Assembly (NCBI GenBank): GCA_965235115.1
Contig: OZ249441.1
Span: 9,858,001 to 9,922,000 of the forward strand
Direction of reading: 5' to 3'
From: Laetmonice hystrix
Lineage: Eukaryota
Length of the DNA stretch: 64,000 nucleotides
The position numbers were made by a program, and so were the translations under genes. The notes under the pieces were generated by a model, which did not search any database, had not been told where the DNA came from, and saw only the letters and a program-made list of their open reading frames with translations. This document shows positions 26,355-63,165 of the stretch, one piece after another (position 1 is the first letter of the stretch; each line of letters opens with the position of its first letter).

Positions 26355-26487
26355 TTAGAAGGCGCAGGCATGGGTGTATCTGCATGGTTACAGAATGGAT
26401 TGTTGAAACCAACTTTAATAATTATTATCAGACGTAGGAACAAATATTACATCATCAGTAAATTAGTGAAAGGAGTAGCCGTCCGGG

Positions 26488-27402
26488 CCGGCGCTCTTGA
26501 CCCGGCGCTCTGCCCGTCCTGGCCGGCGCTCTGCCCGTCCGGACCGGCGCTCTGCCCGTCCGGACCGGCGCTCTGTCCGTCCGGACCGGCGCTCTGCCCG
26601 TCCGGACCGGCGCTCTGCCCGTCCGGACCGGCGCTCTGCCCGTCCGGACCGGCGCTCTGCCCGTCTTGACCGGGCGCTCTGCCCGTCTTGACCCGGCGCT
26701 CTGCCCGTCCTGGCCGGCGCTCTGCCCGTCCGGACCGGCGCTCTGCCCGTCCGGACCGGCGCTCTGCCCGTCTTGACCGGGCGCTCTGCCCGTCTTGACC
26801 CGGCGCTCTGCCCGTCCGGACCCAGCGCTCTGCCCGTCCGGACCGGCGCTCTGCCCGTCTTGACCCGGCGCTCTGCCCGTCTTGACCCGGCGCTCTGTCC
26901 GTCCCGACCCGGCGCTCTGCCCGTCTTGACCGGGTGCTCTCCCCGTCCGGACCCGGCGCTCTGCCCGACTTGACCCGGCGCTCTGCCCGTCCCGACCCGG
27001 CGCTCTGCCCGTCTTGACCCGGCGCTCTGCCCGTCCCGACCCGGCGCTCTGCCCGTCTTGACCCGGCGCTCTGCCCGTCTTGACCCGGCGCTCTGCCCGT
27101 CTTGACCCGGCGCTCTGCCCGTCCCGACCCGGCGCTCTGCCCGACTTGACCCGGCGCTCTGCCCGTCTTGACCCGGCGCTCTGCCCGTCCCGACCCGGCG
27201 CTCTGCCCGTCCGGACCCGGCGCTCTGCCCGTCTTGACCCGGCGCTCTGCCCGTCTTGACCCGGCGCTCTGCCCGACTTGACCCGGCGCTCTGCCCGTCT
27301 TGACCCGGCGCTCTGCCCGTCTTGACCCGGCGCTCTGCCCGTCCCGACCCGGCGCTCTGCCCGTCCCGACCCGGCGCTCTGCCCGTCCCGACCCGGCGCT
27401 CT
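26488..27402. repeat. GC-rich minisatellite, 21-22-bp unit GACCCGGCGCTCTGCCCGTCTT
   Basis: About 42 copies; explains ORFs 26447 and 26463. Confidence 0.95.
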
Positions 27403-27857
27403 CCACTTCCGGACCGTCCCCGTTCGGATTGTGAGGTCATATTTTATTGATATCTCCCCGAGATATCTGGGCCCACGTTATGGACACGTATATTATATGG
27501 CGAAACTGTTGACAGTAGGCCCGGCCCATTGTGTCGGAACATAAAATATCTGACATTTTGAGCAGTCTGACCACAGTAATCATCATATAATTATGGGAAC
27601 ATTTCTATCAAGGGAGATGTGACCTTTTGCGCGGTGTGTCGTGGGGTTTGAGCAGCCGTCCCCCGTCCCTCTCTCCTTCCGGTGGTTGGACCCGAGGCCG
27701 GCTGCCCCCTGCCCTCCCCCCGTACCCCCGGTCCCCGGTCCCGGACTCGGTCCCAGACCCCGGCCCCCTCAGCTGACGGATTTCCTCCTCGGTTAACATC
27801 CCAACAGTTGCACATTCATCTAGTGGACCAGGTGCTCCACTGACTCCGAGGGTCAGC

Positions 27858-31470: not shown

Positions 31471-32303
31471 TTCAGAGATGATCACTTGCCGTTCGGTAGA
31501 GATAATGCGTGGAGTGACGGGTAGGTGTCGCTGTAATCAGGACCGGTTGATGTGGTGAGGTTCAGACAGGTCGATGGCCGGTGGGGGCAGCACCTGCCTG
31601 GCTGGCTGGCTGGGTGCAGGCCGGCCGGTGACGGCGGACGACCGCCTCCTGTAGCTGTGATCACCGGCAGCAGGCAGGCAGGAAGGCGGGCGGGCGGAGG
31701 GTTCGGGTAGGACCGACCAGCACTGCGAGGGGCGGACGAGGCGGCGGGTGAACGGCTGGTTGATCAGGGTGGACCGGCGACCGTGGCCGATTGTACGGCT
31801 GCAGCAACCAGCAACTGGGGACGGGCAGAGTGAACGGCTGGGGACGGTTGTAAGGACAGACAGCGGCCGTGGCTAGCGCCAGGAACAGGAGGAGCAGCAG
31901 GAGGGACAGCAGCTGTTACAGGCCCGGAGTCTGACGGTAACGGCGCCTGTACTGGGAGGCCAGGCTGTGACGGTAACGGCGCCTGTACTGAGAGGCCAGG
32001 CTGTGACGGTAACGGCGCCTGTACTGGTAGGCCAGGCCGCCGTACAGGCTTGTCCTACAACTGCCGGTATTAAGGCTTACCAACACGCTGGATCCAGGAG
32101 GGCGGACCGTGGGAACGATCAGGCCACAGCACGCCTCCAATCCACCTCCAGTTCCCCCCGCAGTGCCATGCGGCCACCTCGGTGCTAACAGCTGTGTTCT
32201 CCGTGTGTTGTGTCCTTCACGCGGGTTGCCATATTGCGCGGACCAGGCAAGCACACATGTTGGCCAGTACCACGCCGCTGTCTTTTTTACCCGGCCGCCA
32301 TCA

Positions 32304-32316
32304 ACATCATCATCAT

Positions 32317-32374
<58 letters not shown>

Positions 32375-32397
32375 AGCAGCAGCAGCAGCAGCAACAG
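32304..32397 (+). repeat. (CAT)n-(CAG)17-GAGAAG-(CAG)5 trinucleotide tract
   Basis: CAG x17 at 32320-32370 and x5 at 32377-32391. Confidence 0.95.
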
Positions 32398-32557
32398 TGT
32401 CATCCACACAAGATGAGGTCTGCAGCTTAATGGCAGGATTACCATTCTTTCTTTACCAGCCTGGATTTACCTTGGAGTTAATTGGGCTCTTCCCGGATTG
32501 GATTATCCCGGATTGGTTGTGCCGGTGAAGTGTGCTGTAAGGGAGGATGGCCGGAGG

Positions 32558-32712
32558 CTGACCGTGTTCACATTACCGGGTTCAGGTACCAGCCCTGACC
32601 GTGTTCACATTACTGGGTTCAGGTACCAGCCCTGACCGTGTTCACATTACTGGGTTCAGGTACCAGCCCTGACCGTGTTCACATTACCGGGTTCATGTTC
32701 CAGCCCTGACCG
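32558..32712. repeat. 37-bp unit x4 (CTGACCGTGTTCACATTACTGGGTTCAGGTACCAGCC)
   Basis: Spacing 32559 to 32596. Confidence 0.9.
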
Positions 32713-32986
32713 CTCACACTACCTGGACTGCAACCGGTCACAACCTACAACCTCACTTACCAACAGCACCAACAACAACGAAAACGGCAGCAGCAACAAC
32801 AACCCCACAGCAGCAGTGTCTGGAGGTGGGAGGCGTGGCATGGGCGCCGATAGTTCCACCAGCAGTTCCCCCTTTACGGCCCCCCTAGCAGTTTCCCCTA
32901 GCGCGGAATGTCCATAGACAGGTGGCACCGTGGCCCGCCCCCCAGGTGCCCCCCGGACTCTGCCCCCGGTCGAGTGTTCGGTCGAG

Positions 32987-33037
32987 ATGATTGGACTCAA
33001 CATCAGTCTACAGGATCTCCTGGAGAGTTTTGAGGAG
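32987..33037 (+). CDS. Candidate coding end of an alternative first exon (MIGLNISLQDLLESFEE) for a short Dp116/G-utrophin-like isoform
   Basis: ATG at 32987, 17 codons, then GAG|GTGTGT donor in phase 0, matching the phase-0 acceptor at 62462. Lies at the end of a GC/CpG-rich, CAG-containing block typical of first exons. Inference; no transcript evidence. Confidence 0.5.
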
Positions 33038-34169
33038 GTGTGTATCTCTCTGTCTTTCTCTGTCTCTCTCCTGGTGCAAGCACCACCTATCTCTCTCCCT
33101 GTCTCTCCTGGTGCAAACACCACCTATCTCTCTCCCTGTCTCTCTCCTGGTGCCAGACACCTGGCTTCAATCACCTCACAGGGAACTTAACTTCCCAATG
33201 TCTCTGCCCACAGCGCTGTTTTCATTCACAAATTTGAACAGGCATGGTGAAATGTCTTTAGATGAATAGCTCCCTCATAGGACCTTCTTACCAATCACAA
33301 GACCTTCGTACCAATCCCAAGGCAAGCTCCTGGTAACTCGGACCAAAGTATAACTTTATTAACTCACCTAAAATCGGACCTCTACTATTGTCCGGTGAAA
33401 TGGTTATTCAGGTTTCTGATCACACAGACGTGCAGGTATGTTGGGGCGACCTCCCGCCGAGTGTGAGTACACGAGTCACTTTACCGGGTGTTCATTCCTC
33501 CATGATAACTTTCTCGCGAAATTGGGACCAGGGTTAGGTCTGAGGGTAAGGGATAGTGATAGTGTAAGGGATAGGGTAAGGGACAGCGTTGGGGACAGGG
33601 AGAGTGTAAGGGGCGGCGACAGGGATAGTGAGGGTGGGGAGGAGGTAGGGTGGGTGGGGTGGGGTGAGAGCAGGGTGGGGGTTTTGATGGTAGGTCCTGT
33701 CAGTGGACACCTGGGTCACATATATACACACACTGAGGGAGAATGTGTAGATTGAACTGGGCGGCCGCTAACCGGTCGGTTCTACCCGACCCCTCACAAT
33801 GCTATTCTCTCAAGACATCGGAACATTCCTCAGTTGTGGGCGTAGGTCGAGGCTTAATACGGGGTCGGGTTACCAATAACGGCCGCACATTGAAGGCTCC
33901 ATATCATTGATTTGTGTGTGTCTCCAACAAAATCCTGTGTGAGAGCCTGGAAATATCTGCTCGGACAGGGAGCCGGAGAATGTCTGATAGCCTTGTCCGG
34001 GCGGGTCAGAGTGTTTACCTACGATTAGTCCCACTGTCATTTGTTTGAGCAATCTGTCTCCACCGAAATGGATCATGATTGCTAGTGGCAACATTTATCT
34101 GGTCATTTCTCGGTGGTATTCTGGGCTCAGACATCATTAGAAAATACCTCTTCCCGTCAGACACACACA

Positions 34170-46903: not shown

Positions 46904-47166
46904 CGATTTATCTCGAGGGAAATCGTTCGGGGTAAATAGAAATGTCATCCATCAACAGGTAGGACGTATAATTATATTTGAAAGATCGAATGTTTGGTAC
47001 ATTGAGACGGAAATAATGTCAGAGAGTATCGCACAAGTCTGGCGGTCACTCAGTCCATGCCTGGCCAGGTTGGTCAGTCTGTGTAAAGTGTTGGTCTGAA
47101 AGCAGTCACTGCCCCACCCCCGAGGCGGTGGGCCATGGGCCGGGACGGGCAATAGGTTGTGGGCCG

Positions 47167-47905
47167 GGCCGGGAGGTGGGCCAGTAGGCCGGGGTTGGCG
47201 GCCGGGGCGGGCTGTCCCCTCCCGGTGGTAGGCCGGGGCGGGCCGTCCCCTCCCGGTGGTAGGCCGGGGTTGGCGGCCGGGGCGGGCCGTCCCCTCCCGG
47301 TGGTAGGCCGGGGTTGGCGGCCGGGGCGGGCCGTCCCCTCCCGGTGGTAGGCCGGGGTTGGCGGCCGGGACGGGCCGTCCCATCCCGGTGGTAGGCCGGG
47401 GTTGGCGGCCGGGGCGGGCTGTCCCCTCCCGGTGGTAGGCCGGGACGGGCCGTCCCATCCCGGTGGAAGGCCGGGGTTGGCGGTCTGGGGCGGGCCGCCC
47501 CCTCCCGGTGGTAGGCTGGGGCGGGCAGTCCCCTCCCGGTGGTAGGCCGGGGTTGGCGGCCGGGACGGGCCGTCCCCTCCCGGTGGTAGGCCGGGGTTGG
47601 CGGCCGGGGCGGGCCGTACCCTCCCGGTGGTAGGCCGGGGTTGGCGGGGGGGGGGGGGGCGTCCCCTCCCGGTGGTAGGCCAGGGTTGGCGGCCGGGACG
47701 GGCCGTCCCCTCCCGGTGGTAGGCCGGGGTTGGCGGCCGGGGCGGGCCGTACCCTCACGGTGGTAGGCCGGGGTTGGCGGCCAGGACGGGCCGTCCCCTC
47801 CCGGTGGTAGGCCGGGGTTGGCGGCCGGGGCGGGCTGTCCCCTCCCGGTGGTAGGCCAGGGTTGGCGGCCGGGATGGGCCGTCCCCTCCCGGTGGTAGGC
47901 CGGGC
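47167..47905. repeat. Very GC-rich 31/44-bp minisatellite
   Basis: CCGTCCCCTCCCGGTGGTAGGCCGGGGTTGGCGGCCGGGGCGGG units. Confidence 0.93.
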
Positions 47906-48624
47906 CTCTATTCTGTTATTATCGGGCGGTGGCGGCCGCAGGGACCGCAACCAGTCAGGTCAGTTTGTCCGTTGATCCATCTCCCGTTCACCCACATTTA
48001 GCGAGGGATCCGTCTCGGCCGGGCGGTCCACAATGATTACAACCAGGGGTCAGCAGCCACTTCAGCCAGCCATGCTCAATTTCTGCCCTGACATCCCTCA
48101 CACCTACACGGCTTCATTGCTGTAATTCCTAGCTCTACCCAAGTCCAACGATTTATGCGGTTGTATTGCTGTAACGCCAAGCTCTCCAGGGCTGAGTCGT
48201 TTAGCCTAGCTCGGAATGTCCATGAAATATTAGAAATAAAACTCTATTACTGTGCCTAGCCCCAGACCTAATCCCAACACCTATCCTTGGTCCGCAAACA
48301 CCCCCTCCCCCCTAAAAAAGGAATTTGATGGGAAGTTACCCAGAGTTAGTAACCCTTAGCTCTGTATATTGCTGGTTTGCCTTGCTCTGCGCGGCTGAAT
48401 GTTGTAATGCTCTGCACGGCTGTATTGCTGTATCTGAAAATTCTCTGACAGGAATAATCAGGTTAGAAGGAGTGAACTTTCAGATTGCTGGCTGGAGATG
48501 ACAGACTTGAGGAGCCACCAGACAGGTCGCTGTCAGCCTGAGTTAGTGATCTGGGAGATAATTGGCAGACTCGAAAAGCTGTCAGGGTTAGAGCTGTCAG
48601 GGTTCGACCTGCTGTAAATGTGAG

Positions 48625-54617: not shown

Positions 54618-54699
54618 GTATGGACCCCCCCCCCCCCGACCTTATTCCCATCGCGTCATCGCTCCCTCCTTTCGGAATCACGAGTCAAAGAATTCACGA

Positions 54700-56232
54700 C
54701 GACGGTGAACACATGACGACGACTCCCCTCCCCAGCCAGCCGACGGTGTACACATGACGACGACTCCCCTCCCCAGCCAGCCGACGGTGTGCACATGACG
54801 ACTCCTACCCCTCCCCAGCCAGCCGACGGTGAACACATGACGACTCCTCCCCTCCCCAGCCAGCCGGCGGTGAACACATGACGACTCCCCCAGCCCCTCC
54901 CCAGCCAGCCGACGGTGAACACATGACGACTCCCCCAGCCCCTCCCCAGCCAGCCGACGGTGAACACATGACGACTCCTCCCCTCCCCAGCCAGCCGGCG
55001 GTGAACACATGACGACTCCCCCAGCCCCTCCCCAGCCAGCCGACGGTGAACACATGACGACTCCTCCCCTCCCCAGCCAGCCGACGGTGAACACATGACG
55101 ACTCCTCCCCTCCCCAGCCAGCCGACGGTGAACACATGACGACTCCTCCCCTCCCCAGCCAGCCGACGGTGAACACATGACGACTCCCCCAGCCCCTCCC
55201 CAGCCAGCCGACGGTGAACACATGACGACTCCCCCAGCCCCTCCCCAGCCAGCCGACGGTGAACACATGACGACTCCTCCCCTCCCCAGCCAGCCGACGG
55301 TGAACACATGACGACTCCTCCCCTCCCCAGCCAGCCGACGGTGAACACATGACGACTCCCCCAGCCCCTCCCCAGCCAGCCGACGGTGAACACATGACGA
55401 CTCCTCCCCCTCCCCAGCCAGCCGACGGTGTACACATGACGACTCCTCCCCTCCCCAGCCAGCCGACGGTGTACACATGATGACTCCTCCCCTCCCCAGC
55501 CAGCCGACGGTGAACACATGACGACTCCCCCAGCCCTCCCCAGCCAGCCGACGGTGTACACATGACGACTCCCCCAGCCCCTCCCCAGCCAGCCGACGGT
55601 GTACACATGACGACTCCCCCAGCCCCTCCCCAGCCAGCCGACGGTGTACACATGACGACTCCCCCAGCCCCTCCCCAGCCAGCCGACGGTGTACACATGA
55701 CGACTCCTCTCCTCCCCAGCCAGCCGACGGTGAACACATGACGACTCCCCCAGCCCCTCCCCAGCCAGCCGACGGTGTACACATGACGACTCCCCCAGCC
55801 CCTCCCCAGCCAGCCGACGGTGTACACATGATGACTCCCCCAGCCCCTCCCCAGCCAGCCGACGGTGTACACATGAGGACTCCCCCAACCCCTCCCCAGC
55901 CAGCCGACGGTGAACACATGACGACTCCTACCCCTCCCCAGCCAGCCGACGGTGAACACATGACGACTCCCCCAGCCCCTCCCCAGCCAGCCGACGGTGT
56001 ACACATGACGACTCCCCCAGCCCCTCCCCATCCAGCCGACGGTGAACACATAACGACGACTCCCCCTCCCCAGCCAGCCGACGGTGTACACATGACGACT
56101 CCAACCCCTCCCCAGCCAGCCGACGGTGTACACATGACGACTCCCCCAGCCCCTCCCCAGCCAGCCGACGGTGTACACATGACGACTCCCCCAGCCCCTC
56201 CCCAGCCAGCCGACGGTGAACACATGACGACT
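54700..56232. repeat. 40/45-bp minisatellite, ~36 copies
   Basis: CCCTCCCCAGCCAGCCGACGGTGAACACATGACGACT units; source of 400-540-aa spurious ORFs. Confidence 0.97.
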
Positions 56233-56559
56233 TCAGGACCGTGCTCATCACACGAACCTGGTTGACGATGAGAGTGCTTAGATATAACGTCCATAGGCGC
56301 TGTGATTTGATGAATTTATGTACTGCAGTGGCTTTTATGTTGCTCGGGTCACGAGTGCCATCGGTCTCGTCATTAACGGAAAATCGCAAGGAATCAGCAT
56401 TGCAAAGCCTTGAATATGTTGTGACCGAACCCACGGAGGCCCTGTATAAGAGGTGGAATCTGTTGTGACCGAACCCACGGATCTGTTGTGACCGAACCCA
56501 CGGATCTGTTGTGACCGAACCCACGGAGGCTCTGTATAAGAGGTGGCTTGTTTTGTTCA

Positions 56560-57663: not shown

Positions 57664-58417
57664 AGCATACATATTGGGTGTGACAACCGTTATAACGGAG
57701 GAGGTCGTAAGGTGAAGTCCTCCATCCCGGGGACGGGGGGGGGGGGGGGGGGGGGGTCGGGGTCGGTGACTGGGAAGGGGGGGGGGGGGGTCGGCTGTAC
57801 GCAGACAGTGGGTGTAATTACACTGACATTCACACCCACCACACATCTCACGGCTAATCAGCTCGACACTGGAAACACACTGAAAGAACCTGGCGGTGCA
57901 ATTGACATTTTGACTGTCGCTGACATCGTAAACTGAAATTATTGTCAGTAAACTCAATTAGGGTCCATTGTGTTGTAGGAGTGCTATTAATAAACATGCC
58001 GGGAAAGGAATGAGAACTGGGATGATCGGAAATGTCAGTCGTTTTATTAGGATAATTTATACCCCCCCCCCCCGACCTCTACAGAAACATCCGGAAACAA
58101 GCTTATAGATAAACAGAGCTATGTTGTTCATTTTAAAGGAGCTGTGTTCATTTAACTGACAATTAATACATTTCATAGGTCACGTGATGGGAGCGGGATA
58201 TCACCTATACATCCGCTGCACTTTGCCCTACAGTTCCTCTTTGACAGGTTCATCGGGTTCAGGGGTGTGCTGCTCTGAATGAATATATAAGGAGATCTAG
58301 GGGACTCCAGAGAGTGAGATATATCGAAGGTATACCGTTCGTCGCCCGGTTTCTGTCAACAGGTGGAACTTCAGTTAGTGTCGGAGGTATGAGTGGCTGT
58401 AAGCCGGAGGGGCGGGA

Positions 58418-58995
58418 GAGGGGCGGTCCGCACCCACAGCCGGGGGAGGGGCGAGGTGGGGGAGGGGCGGTCCGCACCCACAGCCGGGGGACAGGCGAGG
58501 TGGGGGAGGGGCGGTCCGCACCCACAGCCGGGGGACGGGCGAGGTGGGGGAGGGGCGGTCCGCACCCACAGCCGGGGGACGGGCGAGGGGCGGTCCGCAC
58601 CCACAGCCGGGGGACGGGCTAGTAACGGCGGAGGGAGTGGGGAGGGGCGGTCCGCACCCACAGCCGGGGGACGGGCGAGGTGGGGGAGGGGCGGTCCGCA
58701 CCCACAGCCGGGGGACGGGGGAGGTGGGGGAGGGGCGGTCCGCACCCACAGCCAGGGGACGGGCGAGGTGGGGGAGGGGCGGTCCGCACCCACAGCCGGG
58801 GGACGGGCCGGTAGGACCGGGCGAGGGGGGCGGCCCGCACCCGCAGCCGGTGGGACGGGCTAGTAACGCCGGGGGGGGGGGGGAGGGCGGCCCGTACCCA
58901 CAGCCGGGGGACGTGCTATTAACGCCGGGAGCGGGGGGAGTGGGGGAGGGCGGCCCGTACCCACAGCCGGTGGACGGGCCGGTAGGACCGGGCGA
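58418..58995. repeat. G-rich ~44-bp minisatellite
   Basis: GGGCGGTCCGCACCCACAGCCGGGGGACGGGCGAGGTGGGGGAG units. Confidence 0.92.
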
Positions 58996-59360
58996 GGGGG
59001 GTGACGATGGTGCTGATTGATTGCCTTTCGATACGGCACTCGATGACTTCCGTGTTGTAAGTGGTGCACACAGGTACGGTGGTCCCGCTTCTGCTGGCTC
59101 CCTCCAGCGGGCGGTGGTGGCACTAGGTGAGAGTGGTGTTTGGCACCAGCACCACCACCATTAGGTGAATCCACTGAGAATCCACAATGTTGGACCTGGG
59201 ACCGACTGTTATCACACCGACCCACACCTGTTAACCGGCCGAGATTCATTGTAGCCACCACCATACAAACTGTATGGTTCACTATCCTATTACCAACACA
59301 ATCACAGCGTCTCGGCTACAGGTAATTAGATGGTGTTACCTGTGAGATGAAATAGGTTCA

Positions 59361-61999: not shown

Positions 62000-62491
62000 G
62001 TGTTTGAATGTCGGATTGAGTGATCCTAACGCTGGGATTGTTTGGTTACAGGACCTGCAAGCAGAGATCGAGACCCACCAGGTGTTTGAATGTCGGATTG
62101 AGTGATCCTAACGCTGGGATTGTTTGGTTACAGGACCTGCAAGCAGAGATCGAGACCCACCAGGTGTTTGAATGTCGGATTGAGTGATCCTAACGCTGGG
62201 ATTGTTTGGTTACAGGACCTGCAAGCAGAGATCGAGACCCACCAGGTGTTTGAATGTCGGATTGAGTGATCCTAACGCTGGGATTGTTTGGTTACAGTAC
62301 CTGCAAGCAGAGATCGAGACCCACCAGGTGTTTGAATGTCGGATTGAGTGATCCTAACGCTGGGATTGTTTGGTTACAGGACCTGCAATCAGAGATCGAG
62401 ACCCACCGGGTGTTTGAATGTCGGATTGAGTGATCCTAACGCTGGGATTGTTTGGTTACAGGACCTGCAAGCAGAAATCGAGACCCACCAG
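62000..62491 (+). repeat. 82-bp unit x6 containing branch point, 3' splice site and first 30 nt of the dystrophin exon
   Basis: TTACAG| acceptors precede 62052, 62134, 62216, 62298, 62380 and 62462, each with CCTAAC about 25 nt upstream. Confidence 0.95.
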
Positions 62492-62697
62492 CATGTGTTT
62501 GACTCCCTCCAGTCTCAAGGCAGACAGATCGCAAGGTCCCCCGAACCTGGCGGTACGACAGCCGAGTCCAAGCCGCCCGCGGTATCAGCGCCCGGGACAG
62601 CGGCGACGGCGGCCACCGACTCGTCCAGCCTACAGCGCCGCCTGGAGGAGATGAACCAGCGCTGGGTCCGCCTCAAGACGAAATCCATGGAAATAAG
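62462..62697 (+). CDS. DMD: Internal coding exon of a dystrophin/utrophin-family gene (spectrin repeat; equivalent of vertebrate DMD exon 56), phase 0 to phase 2
   Basis: Translates DLQAEIETHQHVFDSLQSQGRQIARS(30 aa)LQRRLEEMNQRWVRLKTKSMEI-R. This aligns with human dystrophin DLQGEIEAHTDVYHNLDENSQKILRS...LQRRLDNMNFKWSELRKKSLNIR and utrophin DIQAEIDAHND...[23 protein letters not shown] (recalled). Acceptor is CCTAAC branch point ...TTGGTTACAG|GAC. Donor is ATAAG|GCGAGT at the position where the human exon ends (I-R, phase 2). Confidence 0.9.
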
Positions 62698-62700
62698 GCG

Positions 62701-63165
62701 AGTCACTGTCTGTTCGTATACTAGCGTAAGATAATGATACACTGTCCATACAAGTCACTCTCTGTCCGTGTACCCGTGTAGATAATGAGACAATGTCCAT
62801 ACAAGTCACTGTCTGTCCGGGTACCAGTGTAAGATAATGAGACAATGTCCATACAAGTCACTGTCTGTCCGTGTACCAGCGTAAGATAATGAGACAATGT
62901 CCATATAAGTCACTGTCTGTCCGTGTACTAGCGTAAGATAATGAGACAATGTCCATACAAGTCACTGTCTGCCCGTGTACCAGTGTAAGATAATGAGACA
63001 ATGTCCATACAAGTCACTGTCTGTCCGTGTACCCGTGTAGATAATGAGACAATGTCCATACAAGTCACTGTCTGTCCGTGTACCCGTGTAGATAATGAGA
63101 CAATGTCCATACAAGTCACTGTCTGTCCGTGTACCCGTGTAAGATAATGAGACAATGTCCATACA
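62701..63165. repeat. 51-52-bp unit x~9 starting immediately after the exon donor
   Basis: GTAAGATAATGAGACAATGTCCATACAAGTCACTGTCTGTCCGTGTACCAGT units. Confidence 0.93.

What the first reader, a model, noticed from the sequence alone, without database searches (positions are those of the whole stretch)
31480..33043. Candidate invertebrate Dp116/G-utrophin-like first exon
A 1.5-kb GC/CpG-rich block ends in ATG-IGLNISLQDLLESFEE-GAG|GTGTGT, in phase 0 with the exon-56 equivalent. The product would begin MIGLNISLQDLLESFEE-DLQAEIETHQ..., which looks like a continuous amphipathic helix. Vertebrate Dp116 and G-utrophin join their unique first exons at exactly this acceptor. An equivalent here would support deep conservation or convergence of the internal promoter position.
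Basis: partly seen in the sequence, partly recalled or inferred. Interest (0 to 1): 0.7.

Follow-up and report, generated by a model that had tools for sequence, protein, structure and literature searches.

The report
Likely short-dystrophin alternative 5' exon
A 51-base start-codon-to-splice-donor segment, deep inside a 104-kb intron of an annelid-like dystrophin gene, closely matches an alternative 5' exon that arthropods splice onto the same downstream exon, so it is probably a real exon for a short, Dp116-like dystrophin, though its use in RNA could not be tested.

Summary
The sequence observation is correct. ATG 32987 to GAG 33037 is followed by GTGTGT, in phase 0 with the exon-56 equivalent at 62462, and there is an in-frame stop 23 codons upstream.

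On those features alone it is not special. The intron holds 17 comparable ATG-to-donor open frames. The upstream block is GC-rich (60.6%) but not CpG-enriched (o/e 0.66; regional mean 0.67), and about a fifth of it is minisatellite or CAG repeat.

I found the true exon-55 equivalent 41 kb upstream of the window. The candidate therefore lies inside a 103.6-kb intron orthologous to vertebrate intron 55.

The decisive evidence is comparative. Insects, a springtail, a horseshoe crab and a spider carry a conserved alternative 5' exon (...FIHINFxLLAELxxFEK|DLQSEIE) spliced at the same acceptor. A profile built only from those sequences ranks the candidate first of 267,900 windows across 134 kb, in exact register with its donor. 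The candidate also scores above two held-out arthropod members.

No RNA data exist for this organism in the tools, and no second annelid could be checked beyond 10 kb. No significant similarity to vertebrate Dp116 or G-utrophin first exons was found.

Verdict: the exon is probably real (about 0.65). The promoter is unproven. The idea of an ancient promoter in this intron is already published.

The parts
32987..33037 (+). Coding part of the candidate alternative 5' exon: ATG + 16 codons, MIGLNISLQDLLESFEE
   Evidence: sequence. Arthropod-only profile ranks this window 1 of 267,900, at 16.1 bits against 9.5 for the next. No non-homologous 17-mer among 76,057 from arthropod dystrophins reaches it.
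33038..33043 (+). Splice-donor-like site GAG|GTGTGT, phase 0
   Evidence: Donor PWM 4.43 bits, similar to the real exon-55-equivalent donor at 4.32. Only 54 sites this good on the + strand of the 103.6-kb intron.
32915..32917 (+). In-frame TAG that closes the frame upstream, so ATG 32987 is the only possible start within this exon
32946..32986 (+). Possible 5' UTR. An acceptor-like cccccccag|G ends at 32945. Weak gag| acceptors in phase 0 end at 32974 and 32986.
   Evidence: Inference only.
31480..32945 (+). Unique GC-rich block with minisatellites (31932-32037, 32558-32712) and (CAG)26 (32320-32397). Proposed promoter or 5' UTR region, unverified.
62462..62697 (+). Exon-56 equivalent: 236 nt, phase-0 start, phase-2 end. 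This is the inferred splice target.
62698..62703 (+). GC-type donor (AAG|GCGAGT) of the exon-56 equivalent
   Evidence: The phase is confirmed by the exon-57-equivalent acceptor acag|G AGT CGC.
62000..62461 (+). Five tandem 82-nt copies of the acceptor plus the first ten codons of the exon-56 equivalent. These are decoy acceptors lying between the candidate exon and its target.

Best explanation
The ATG...GAG|GT segment at 32987-33037 is the coding end of a genuine alternative 5' exon of this annelid-like dystrophin gene. It lies 74 kb into the 103.6-kb intron that corresponds to vertebrate intron 55.

Inferred mechanism: transcription starts somewhere upstream within that intron. The exon supplies the initiator Met and a 17-residue amphipathic helix. 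Its donor at 33037|33038 is joined to the exon-56-equivalent acceptor at 62462, 29.4 kb downstream. The product is MIGLNISLQDLLESFEE-DLQAEIETHQ..., an N-terminally truncated dystrophin. It keeps the last two and a half spectrin repeats and the WW/EF/ZZ/coiled-coil end but lacks the actin-binding domain and most of the rod. That is the same architecture as Dp116, G-utrophin and DRP2.

The exon is the counterpart of a conserved arthropod alternative 5' exon, called 'type 2' here.

Shown: position, phase, open frame and the cross-phylum peptide match.
Inferred: splicing, the promoter and the protein.
For: (1) Orthologous intron. The exon-55 equivalent (190 nt, phase-0 end...EELRRQQQQYK|GTAGGA) is at C6:9816629-9816818. 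The exon-56 equivalent is at window 62462.

(2) Arthropod gene models from independent annotations carry ...(EDAR)F[IV]H[IL]NFxLLAELxxFE[KQ]|DLQSEIE. They include Trichomalopsis, Manduca, Timema, Laodelphax, Papilio, Parnassius, Leptosia, Melitaea, Parthenolecanium and a Logan genomic contig. The spider Trichonephila has MMAATPDSRNLKLVNVVLQQILHKFEG|DLQREIE.

(3) A 17-column profile was built from those sequences without the candidate. Scanned over all 267,900 six-frame windows of C6:9798001-9932000, it puts the candidate first (16.1 against 9.5 bits), with the window ending exactly at the GT donor. It is also rank 1 with insects only, rank 3 with the spider alone, and reached by 0-1 of 100,000 composition-preserving permutations.

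(4) HMMER emission scores, applied ungapped and full-length, also rank it first under three training sets.

(5) Among 76,057 distinct 17-mers from about 120 helix-rich arthropod dystrophins, only training members beat it. The next are two held-out true members in register, Tachypleus at 14.3 and Orchesella at 11.4. Everything else scores 8.8 or less.

(6) In 263 kb of unrelated DNA the maximum is 13.5 bits.

(7) It shares N(-13), L(-10), L(-6), F(-3) and E(-2) with the arthropod family.

(8) The spider exon has the same anatomy: ATG, in-frame stop upstream, GT donor, located in the intron before the exon-56 equivalent.

(9) An AlphaFold model of the spider N-terminus gives one helix running through the junction, with pLDDT 79-85.

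(10) The phase-0 acceptors upstream are weak gag| sites, which argues against cassette use.
Against: - No RNA evidence of any kind. The only runs are DNA contigs of one sample and show no joints. No same-species proteins or transcripts are in the databases.
- The match is short: 17 residues, with 5-7 identities per pair.
- In a blind scan the tail-fitted expectation for 16.1 bits or more is 0.1-0.25 per 268,000 windows. The strength therefore rests on the window being pre-specified and in register with a donor.
- hmmsearch in local mode does not rank it first: 7.8 bits for the 17-mer, 3.6 within its 90-aa open frame, and 10.5 for another segment.
- The arthropod 'EDAR' and 'TWPG' motifs are absent.
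- No homologue lies within 10 kb upstream of the exon-56 equivalent in relatives, including Paralvinella palmiformis.
- There is no CpG-island or core-promoter signature.
- Five decoy acceptors lie before the target exon.
Confidence: 0.65

Rival explanations
1. A chance open frame and donor-like site in a repeat-rich giant intron. On this reading the resemblance to the arthropod exon is coincidence among short, helix-like, Leu/Glu-rich peptides.
For: 17 comparable ATG-to-donor frames occur in the intron by chance. The blind-scan expectation for the profile score is 0.1-0.25. Local hmmsearch does not single it out. No conservation is seen in the 10 kb available from relatives. There is no CpG island and no RNA data.
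Against: The window was chosen beforehand without arthropod data. For a pre-specified window the chance of 16.1 bits or more is about 6e-7 under the genomic null, below 1.3e-5 under the helical null and at most 1e-5 under permutation. The best-scoring window of 134 kb is on the right strand, in the right intron and ends exactly at a good donor. It outscores two held-out true members.
Confidence: 0.2
2. An in-frame cassette exon of 51 or 63 nt between the exon-55 and exon-56 equivalents of the full-length transcript, rather than a 5' exon. It would insert (CSVE)MIGLNISLQDLLESFEE into spectrin repeat 22.
For: AG dinucleotides end at 32974 and 32986, both in phase 0. That is compatible with the phase-0 end of the exon-55 equivalent.
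Against: Both acceptors are gag|, the least favoured -3 base, with mediocre pyrimidine tracts. In arthropods the homologous exon is used as an alternative 5' exon, never between the canonical exons, in the models seen. A 17-residue insert would shift the heptad register: the hydrophobic residue sits at -3 here, but at -2 in the canonical exon (Y in this gene).
Confidence: 0.07
3. A relic of an ancestral alternative exon. It is still recognisable and intact by chance but no longer transcribed or spliced in this lineage.
For: No promoter signature. The exon lies 29 kb from its target, with five decoy acceptors in between. The upstream arthropod motifs are missing.
Against: ATG, open frame, donor and all five family-conserved positions are intact, although the surrounding intron is unalignable even between annelids. 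An unconstrained 51-nt relic should have decayed.
Confidence: 0.08

Closest known systems
Arthropod 'type 2' alternative 5' exon of dystrophin (predicted isoforms). Examples: Trichonephila clavata 'dystrophin, isoform D' (P0184), Papilio machaon dystrophin (P0130), Parthenolecanium corni (P0133), Tachypleus tridentatus isoform X3 (P0187), Orchesella cincta 'isoform D' (P0146).
   Same: It lies in the intron before the exon-56 equivalent and splices in phase 0 onto DLQxEIE. It shares positions N(-13), L(-10), L(-6), F(-3) and E(-2). In the spider and horseshoe crab it is a short ATG-bearing first coding exon. The spider has an in-frame stop upstream, as here.
   Different: Insects and the springtail have a longer unique N-terminal region (60-290 residues) with EDAR and TWPG motifs that are absent here. 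The exon is 0.1-1 kb from its target in the two arthropod loci examined, against 29.4 kb here.
Vertebrate Dp116 and G-utrophin first exons, and DRP2
   Same: The unique first exon lies in intron 55 and is spliced to exon 56. The product keeps the end of repeat 22, repeats 23-24 and the C-terminal domains. The G-utrophin exon also encodes a strongly helical peptide (PMC1790709).
   Different: No significant sequence similarity was found. The best pair, human Dp116 against Tachypleus (CSARF...TY), has p=0.007 before correction for 32 tests. Expression is documented for the vertebrate isoforms but not here.
Sea urchin SuDp98 and Drosophila Dp205
   Same: Both are reported to arise within the orthologous intron, which led Jin et al. 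2007 to call the promoter ancient.
   Different: SuDp98 is reported to use an internal initiation site. Dp205-type insect isoforms end their large unique domain with a different exon (...RNGFxxLDDKxxLFxDILDxQExFxQ|DLQ). The candidate does not match that one: rank 31, 2.4 bits.

Membership tests
Dp116/G-utrophin-type short isoform (alternative first exon in the intron-55 equivalent) | Lies in the intron orthologous to vertebrate intron 55 | tested here: met
   The exon-55 equivalent is at C6:9816629-9816818 and the exon-56 equivalent at window 62462. The candidate lies between them.
Dp116/G-utrophin-type short isoform (alternative first exon in the intron-55 equivalent) | Donor phase compatible with the exon-56 acceptor, and its own ATG with the frame closed upstream | tested here: met
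   Phase-0 donor at 33037|33038, TAG at 32915-17, and a single in-frame ATG.
Dp116/G-utrophin-type short isoform (alternative first exon in the intron-55 equivalent) | A transcript with the first-exon-to-exon-56 junction and a transcription start inside the intron | not testable with these tools
   Only three DNA-like runs of one sample were found, with no joints. No same-species transcripts or proteins are in the databases.
Dp116/G-utrophin-type short isoform (alternative first exon in the intron-55 equivalent) | Peptide similarity to vertebrate Dp116 or G-utrophin exon 1 | tested here: not met
   Local alignments against shuffles give annelid p=0.24-0.90. The best pair of any kind has p=0.007, uncorrected for 32 tests.
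Arthropod type-2 alternative 5' exon | In-register match to the 17 residues before the junction, including N(-13), L(-10), L(-6), F(-3), E(-2) | tested here: met
   All five positions are present. The arthropod-only profile scores it 16.1 bits, rank 1 of 267,900, above the held-out Tachypleus (14.3) and Orchesella (11.4).
Arthropod type-2 alternative 5' exon | The upstream EDAR(F/Y) motif and, in insects, TWPG(R/S)R | tested here: not met
   The annelid has ...PPVECSVE before the Met, and no TWPG in the + frames of the intron. The spider keeps only D..R at these positions.
Insect type-3 (Dp205-like) exon ...LFxDILDxQExFxQ|DLQ | In-register profile match | tested here: not met
   2.4 bits, rank 31 of 267,900.
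CpG-island promoter | Local CpG observed/expected clearly above background | tested here: not met
   The block has o/e 0.66 against a regional mean of 0.674. The last 500 nt before the ATG have 0.57.
In-frame cassette exon of the full-length transcript | A usable phase-0 acceptor upstream of the open segment | tested here: inconclusive
   Only gag| sites, at 32974 and 32986. The better cag|G at 32945 is out of phase with the exon-55 equivalent.

The most novel reading that the evidence does not exclude
The exon descends from a single ancestral bilaterian first exon of the Dp116/G-utrophin/DRP2-type isoform. On this reading the vertebrate Dp116 first exon, the arthropod type-2 exon and this annelid exon are all homologous, and the internal promoter of intron 55 predates the protostome-deuterostome split with recognisable coding sequence. 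Hints: CSARF-x8-TY is shared in register by human Dp116 and horseshoe-crab exon 1, and the springtail has CC.EDARF.
Probability: 0.12. Interest if true: 0.8.

Novelty: new member of a known kind. Interest (0 to 1): 0.55.

Why it matters
Short dystrophins made from internal promoters (Dp116, G-utrophin, DRP2, fly Dp205, sea urchin SuDp98) were proposed to share an ancient promoter, on the evidence of intron position alone.

If this exon is real, an annelid and arthropods share more than the position. They share a recognisable first-exon peptide joined at the same acceptor. That would place this isoform in the protostome ancestor and give a sequence handle, a 17-residue motif ending FEx|DLQ. With it the exon can be found in other phyla and the N-terminal helix can be studied functionally. 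It would also be a concrete, cheap target for RT-PCR.

Tried and rejected
(1) 'The segment is the missing 3' part of the exon-55 equivalent.' Rejected: a complete 190-nt exon-55 equivalent, ending ...QQQQYK in phase 0, lies 41 kb upstream of the window.

(2) RNA test. The single run search returned only DNA-like contigs of one sample. Laying them showed contiguous genomic coverage, no joints at 33037 and no variants in the exon.

(3) Same-species or close transcripts in protein databases. None were found. All lophotrochozoan-like hits to the exon-56 equivalent are genomic open frames that read through the acceptor.

(4) Homologue in relatives. Nothing was found within 10 kb upstream of the exon-56 equivalent in L003/L004, L018, L019 or L020 (Paralvinella palmiformis), nor in the short contigs L013, L014 and L021. 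This is uninformative because the intron is probably far longer than 10 kb.

(5) Walking further upstream in the relative's contig. This was blocked. Its gene calls read TGA as sense, so no product could be passed by reference.

(6) hmmsearch in local mode with 24- and 17-column models did not rank the candidate first. I attribute this to local alignment and target-length effects. The same emissions scored ungapped and full-length rank it first, but the discrepancy stands.

(7) Searches for lophotrochozoan short isoforms, using an insect C-terminal query and the spider N-terminus, returned arthropods only.

(8) Interspersed repeat or transposon origin of the GC-rich block. Rejected: it is single-copy.

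(9) The long open frames in other GC-rich blocks of the window are tandem-repeat artefacts with no credible Pfam domain.

(10) P0051, a 1,871-aa hit, is a bacterial SdrD-like protein matched through low-complexity sequence.

Full report
**The observation.** ATG is at 32987, followed by sixteen sense codons (MIGLNISLQDLLESFEE) ending at 33037, and then GTGTGT. The frame is closed by a TAG at 32915-17, and there is no other in-frame ATG in between. The exon-56 equivalent starts at 62462 with GAC CTG CAA (DLQAEIETHQ...) in phase 0. That exon is one locus in the 627-Mb assembly. Its acceptor position is conserved in about 80 genomic open frames and gene models from other invertebrates. It ends at 62697 in phase 2 with a GC donor (AAG|GCGAGT). 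The phase is confirmed by the exon-57-equivalent acceptor acag|G AGT CGC.

**How special it is on its own.** It is not special.
- With a generic donor weight matrix the site scores 4.43 bits, close to the real exon-55-equivalent donor at 4.32.
- The intron contains 17 ATG-to-phase-0-donor frames that are at least as good.
- The 1.5-kb block is unique in the genome and GC-rich (60.6%).
- Its CpG observed/expected ratio is 0.66, against a regional mean of 0.674. It falls to 0.57 in the 500 nt before the ATG.
- At least a dozen other blocks in the region look more island-like.
- About a fifth of the block is minisatellite or (CAG)26 repeat.
- The open frames inside it are low-complexity.

**Where it sits in the gene.** My first suspicion was that the peptide was simply the end of the exon-55 equivalent. 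That is wrong.
- A search of the assembly with an insect dystrophin located rod exons upstream of the window.
- tblastn on the fetched 60 kb found the exon-55 equivalent at C6:9816629-9816818. It is 190 nt, begins after ...tgttacag| in phase 2 and ends ...EELRRQQQQYK|GTAGGA in phase 0.
- Intron 55-equivalent is therefore 103,643 nt. The window begins inside it. The candidate lies 74 kb into it and 29.4 kb before the exon-56 equivalent.

**Expression.** This is untestable here.
They show even depth and contigs running straight across 33037, broken only at repeats, with no joints.
- No variant letters fall in the exon, but at roughly one SNP per 100-150 bp that means little.
- The protein collections hold nothing from this species.

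**The comparative turn.** Several arthropod gene models that matched the exon-56 equivalent have an alternative peptide spliced directly onto DLQSEIE.
- One class, 'type 2' here, reads ...(EDAR)F[IV]H[IL]NFxLLAELxxFE[KQ]|DLQ. It occurs in a wasp, several Lepidoptera, a stick insect, a planthopper, a scale insect and a Logan genomic contig where it sits 110 nt before the exon.
- A spider model ('dystrophin, isoform D', Trichonephila clavata) starts MMAATPDSRNLKLVNVVLQQILHKFEG|DLQREIE.
- In the spider contig this is an 81-nt ATG exon with an in-frame stop 13 codons upstream, a GGT|GTAAGT donor, and a position 1.0 kb before the exon-56 equivalent.
- The annelid peptide shares N(-13), L(-10), L(-6), F(-3) and E(-2) with this family.

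**Statistics.** I built a 17-column, junction-anchored profile from the ten insect sequences plus the spider, without the candidate. I scored every 17-residue window in six frames of C6:9798001-9932000 (267,900 windows).
- The candidate is first, at 16.1 bits against 9.5 for the next. The window ends exactly at the GT donor.
- Insects alone also rank it first (13.3 against 9.2). Non-lepidopteran insects alone rank it first. The spider alone ranks it third. Between 0 and 1 of 100,000 permutations of the candidate reach its score.
- Among 76,057 distinct 17-mers from about 120 helix-rich arthropod dystrophins, only training members exceed it.
- The next two are held-out genuine members in register: horseshoe crab isoform X3 at 14.3 and the springtail Orchesella at 11.4. 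Everything else scores 8.8 or less.
- In 263 kb of unrelated DNA the maximum is 13.5. An exponential tail fit gives 0.1-0.25 windows at 16.1 bits or more per 268,000.
- The blind-scan significance is therefore modest. But the window was specified beforehand by a reader who did not know the arthropod sequences. For a pre-specified window the chance is about 6e-7 under the genomic null and at most 1e-5 under the helical and permutation nulls.
- Allowing for the roughly five exon classes and several scoring variants I looked at, it stays below about 1e-3.

**Caveat on the scoring.** hmmsearch in its normal local mode does not put the candidate first. It aligns only the last ten columns (7.8 bits) and penalises the 90-residue open frame. 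The same HMMER emissions, used ungapped over all 17 columns, rank it first under three training sets. With insects alone the margin is slim.

**What it does not match.**
- The second conserved insect exon class, the Dp205-like ...LFxDILDxQExFxQ|DLQ: rank 31, 2.4 bits.
- The vertebrate first exons taken from Jin et al.'s supplement. The annelid gives p=0.24-0.90. The best pair overall is human Dp116 against horseshoe crab (CSARF-x8-TY in register), at p=0.007 before correction for 32 comparisons. The chicken sequence lacks that motif. I record it as a lead only.
- The insect EDAR and TWPG motifs are absent.

**First exon or not.**
- The only phase-0 acceptor candidates upstream are gag| sites, which are weak.
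- A better cag|G at 32945 is out of phase with the exon-55 equivalent. It could serve only behind a non-coding upstream exon.
- Together with the spider anatomy this favours an ATG-bearing 5' exon over a cassette. Whether transcription starts directly upstream or further back is open.
- An AlphaFold model of the spider N-terminus, made from a ten-sequence alignment, predicts one helix from residue 8 through the junction, with pLDDT 79-85 there.

**Organism.**
- The mitochondrial contig reads TGA as sense. Its COX1 looks annelid-like, which is my recollection and not a tool result.
- One related exon-56 open frame comes from WGS project JAODUP01, which is Paralvinella palmiformis.
- Relatives could be read only 10 kb either side of the exon-56 equivalent, and nothing resembling the exon lies there. 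Further walking was blocked.

**Comparison with what is known.** Jin et al. [quoted passage not shown] They cited sea urchin SuDp98 and fly Dp205. Fly short isoforms with unique N-termini are well described. What is new here is an annelid instance and a recognisable shared peptide between an annelid and arthropods.

**Verdict.** This is probably a real alternative 5' exon (about 0.65). The remaining probability is split among chance (0.2), relic (0.08) and cassette use (0.07).

Noticed in passing
window 62698-62703: The exon-56 equivalent ends in a GC-AG type donor (AAG|GCGAGT), not GT. The phase is confirmed by the exon-57-equivalent acceptor at C6:9925990 (acag|G AGT CGC CTG).
   Followed up: partly
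window 62000-62461: There are five tandem 82-nt copies of the acceptor plus the first ten codons of the exon-56 equivalent. Each is followed by CACCAG|GTGTTT, so each copy is a potential in-frame 30-nt mini-exon or decoy acceptor. One copy reads tacag|TACCTG and one encodes DLQSEIETHR. The scan has already noted this as s1-344629.
   Followed up: partly
G000:C6:9816629-9816818 (41 kb upstream of the window): The exon-55 equivalent is 190 nt with a phase-2 start and a phase-0 end. By my recollection that is the same length and phases as human exon 55. Intron 55-equivalent is 103.6 kb.
   Followed up: yes
P0187, P0146 and the Dp116 peptides in the PMC1790709 supplement: Human Dp116 exon 1 (QCCSARFKLKMLHRKTYHVK) and horseshoe-crab isoform X3 exon 1 (LCSARFAWMNMICFTYRLR...) share CSARF-x8-TY in register. 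The springtail has CCREDARF. The shuffle p is 0.007 before correction and not significant after it. The chicken sequence lacks the motif.
   Followed up: partly
P0091, P0094, P0095, P0112, P0114, P0116, P0117, P0124: A second conserved insect exon (...PRNGFxxxDDKxxLFxDILDxQExFxQ) also splices onto the exon-56-equivalent acceptor. In Diptera, Hymenoptera and a mayfly it ends a roughly 500-700-residue unique N-terminal domain (shorter, about 210-350 residues, in a termite, a leafhopper and one Drosophila model), which looks Dp205-like. Arthropods therefore have at least two alternative 5' exons in this intron.
   Followed up: partly
L003, L004 (ENA ERZ25767047): The gene calls recorded for these eukaryotic host contigs of metagenome assemblies read TGA as sense, with 1-7 internal TGA per call. 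Their products therefore cannot be reproduced with table 11.
   Followed up: yes
G000:C35:4760-6100: C35 is a mitochondrial contig. Its COX1 has 12 in-frame TGA (=Trp) and ATA/AGR usage typical of the invertebrate mitochondrial code. By recollection the sequence looks annelid-like.
   Followed up: partly
window 26447-27440, 46952-47950, 54656-56294, 58259-59282: Long open frames of 300-540 aa in the other GC-rich blocks of the intron have no credible Pfam match. They appear to be products of tandem repeats.
   Followed up: partly
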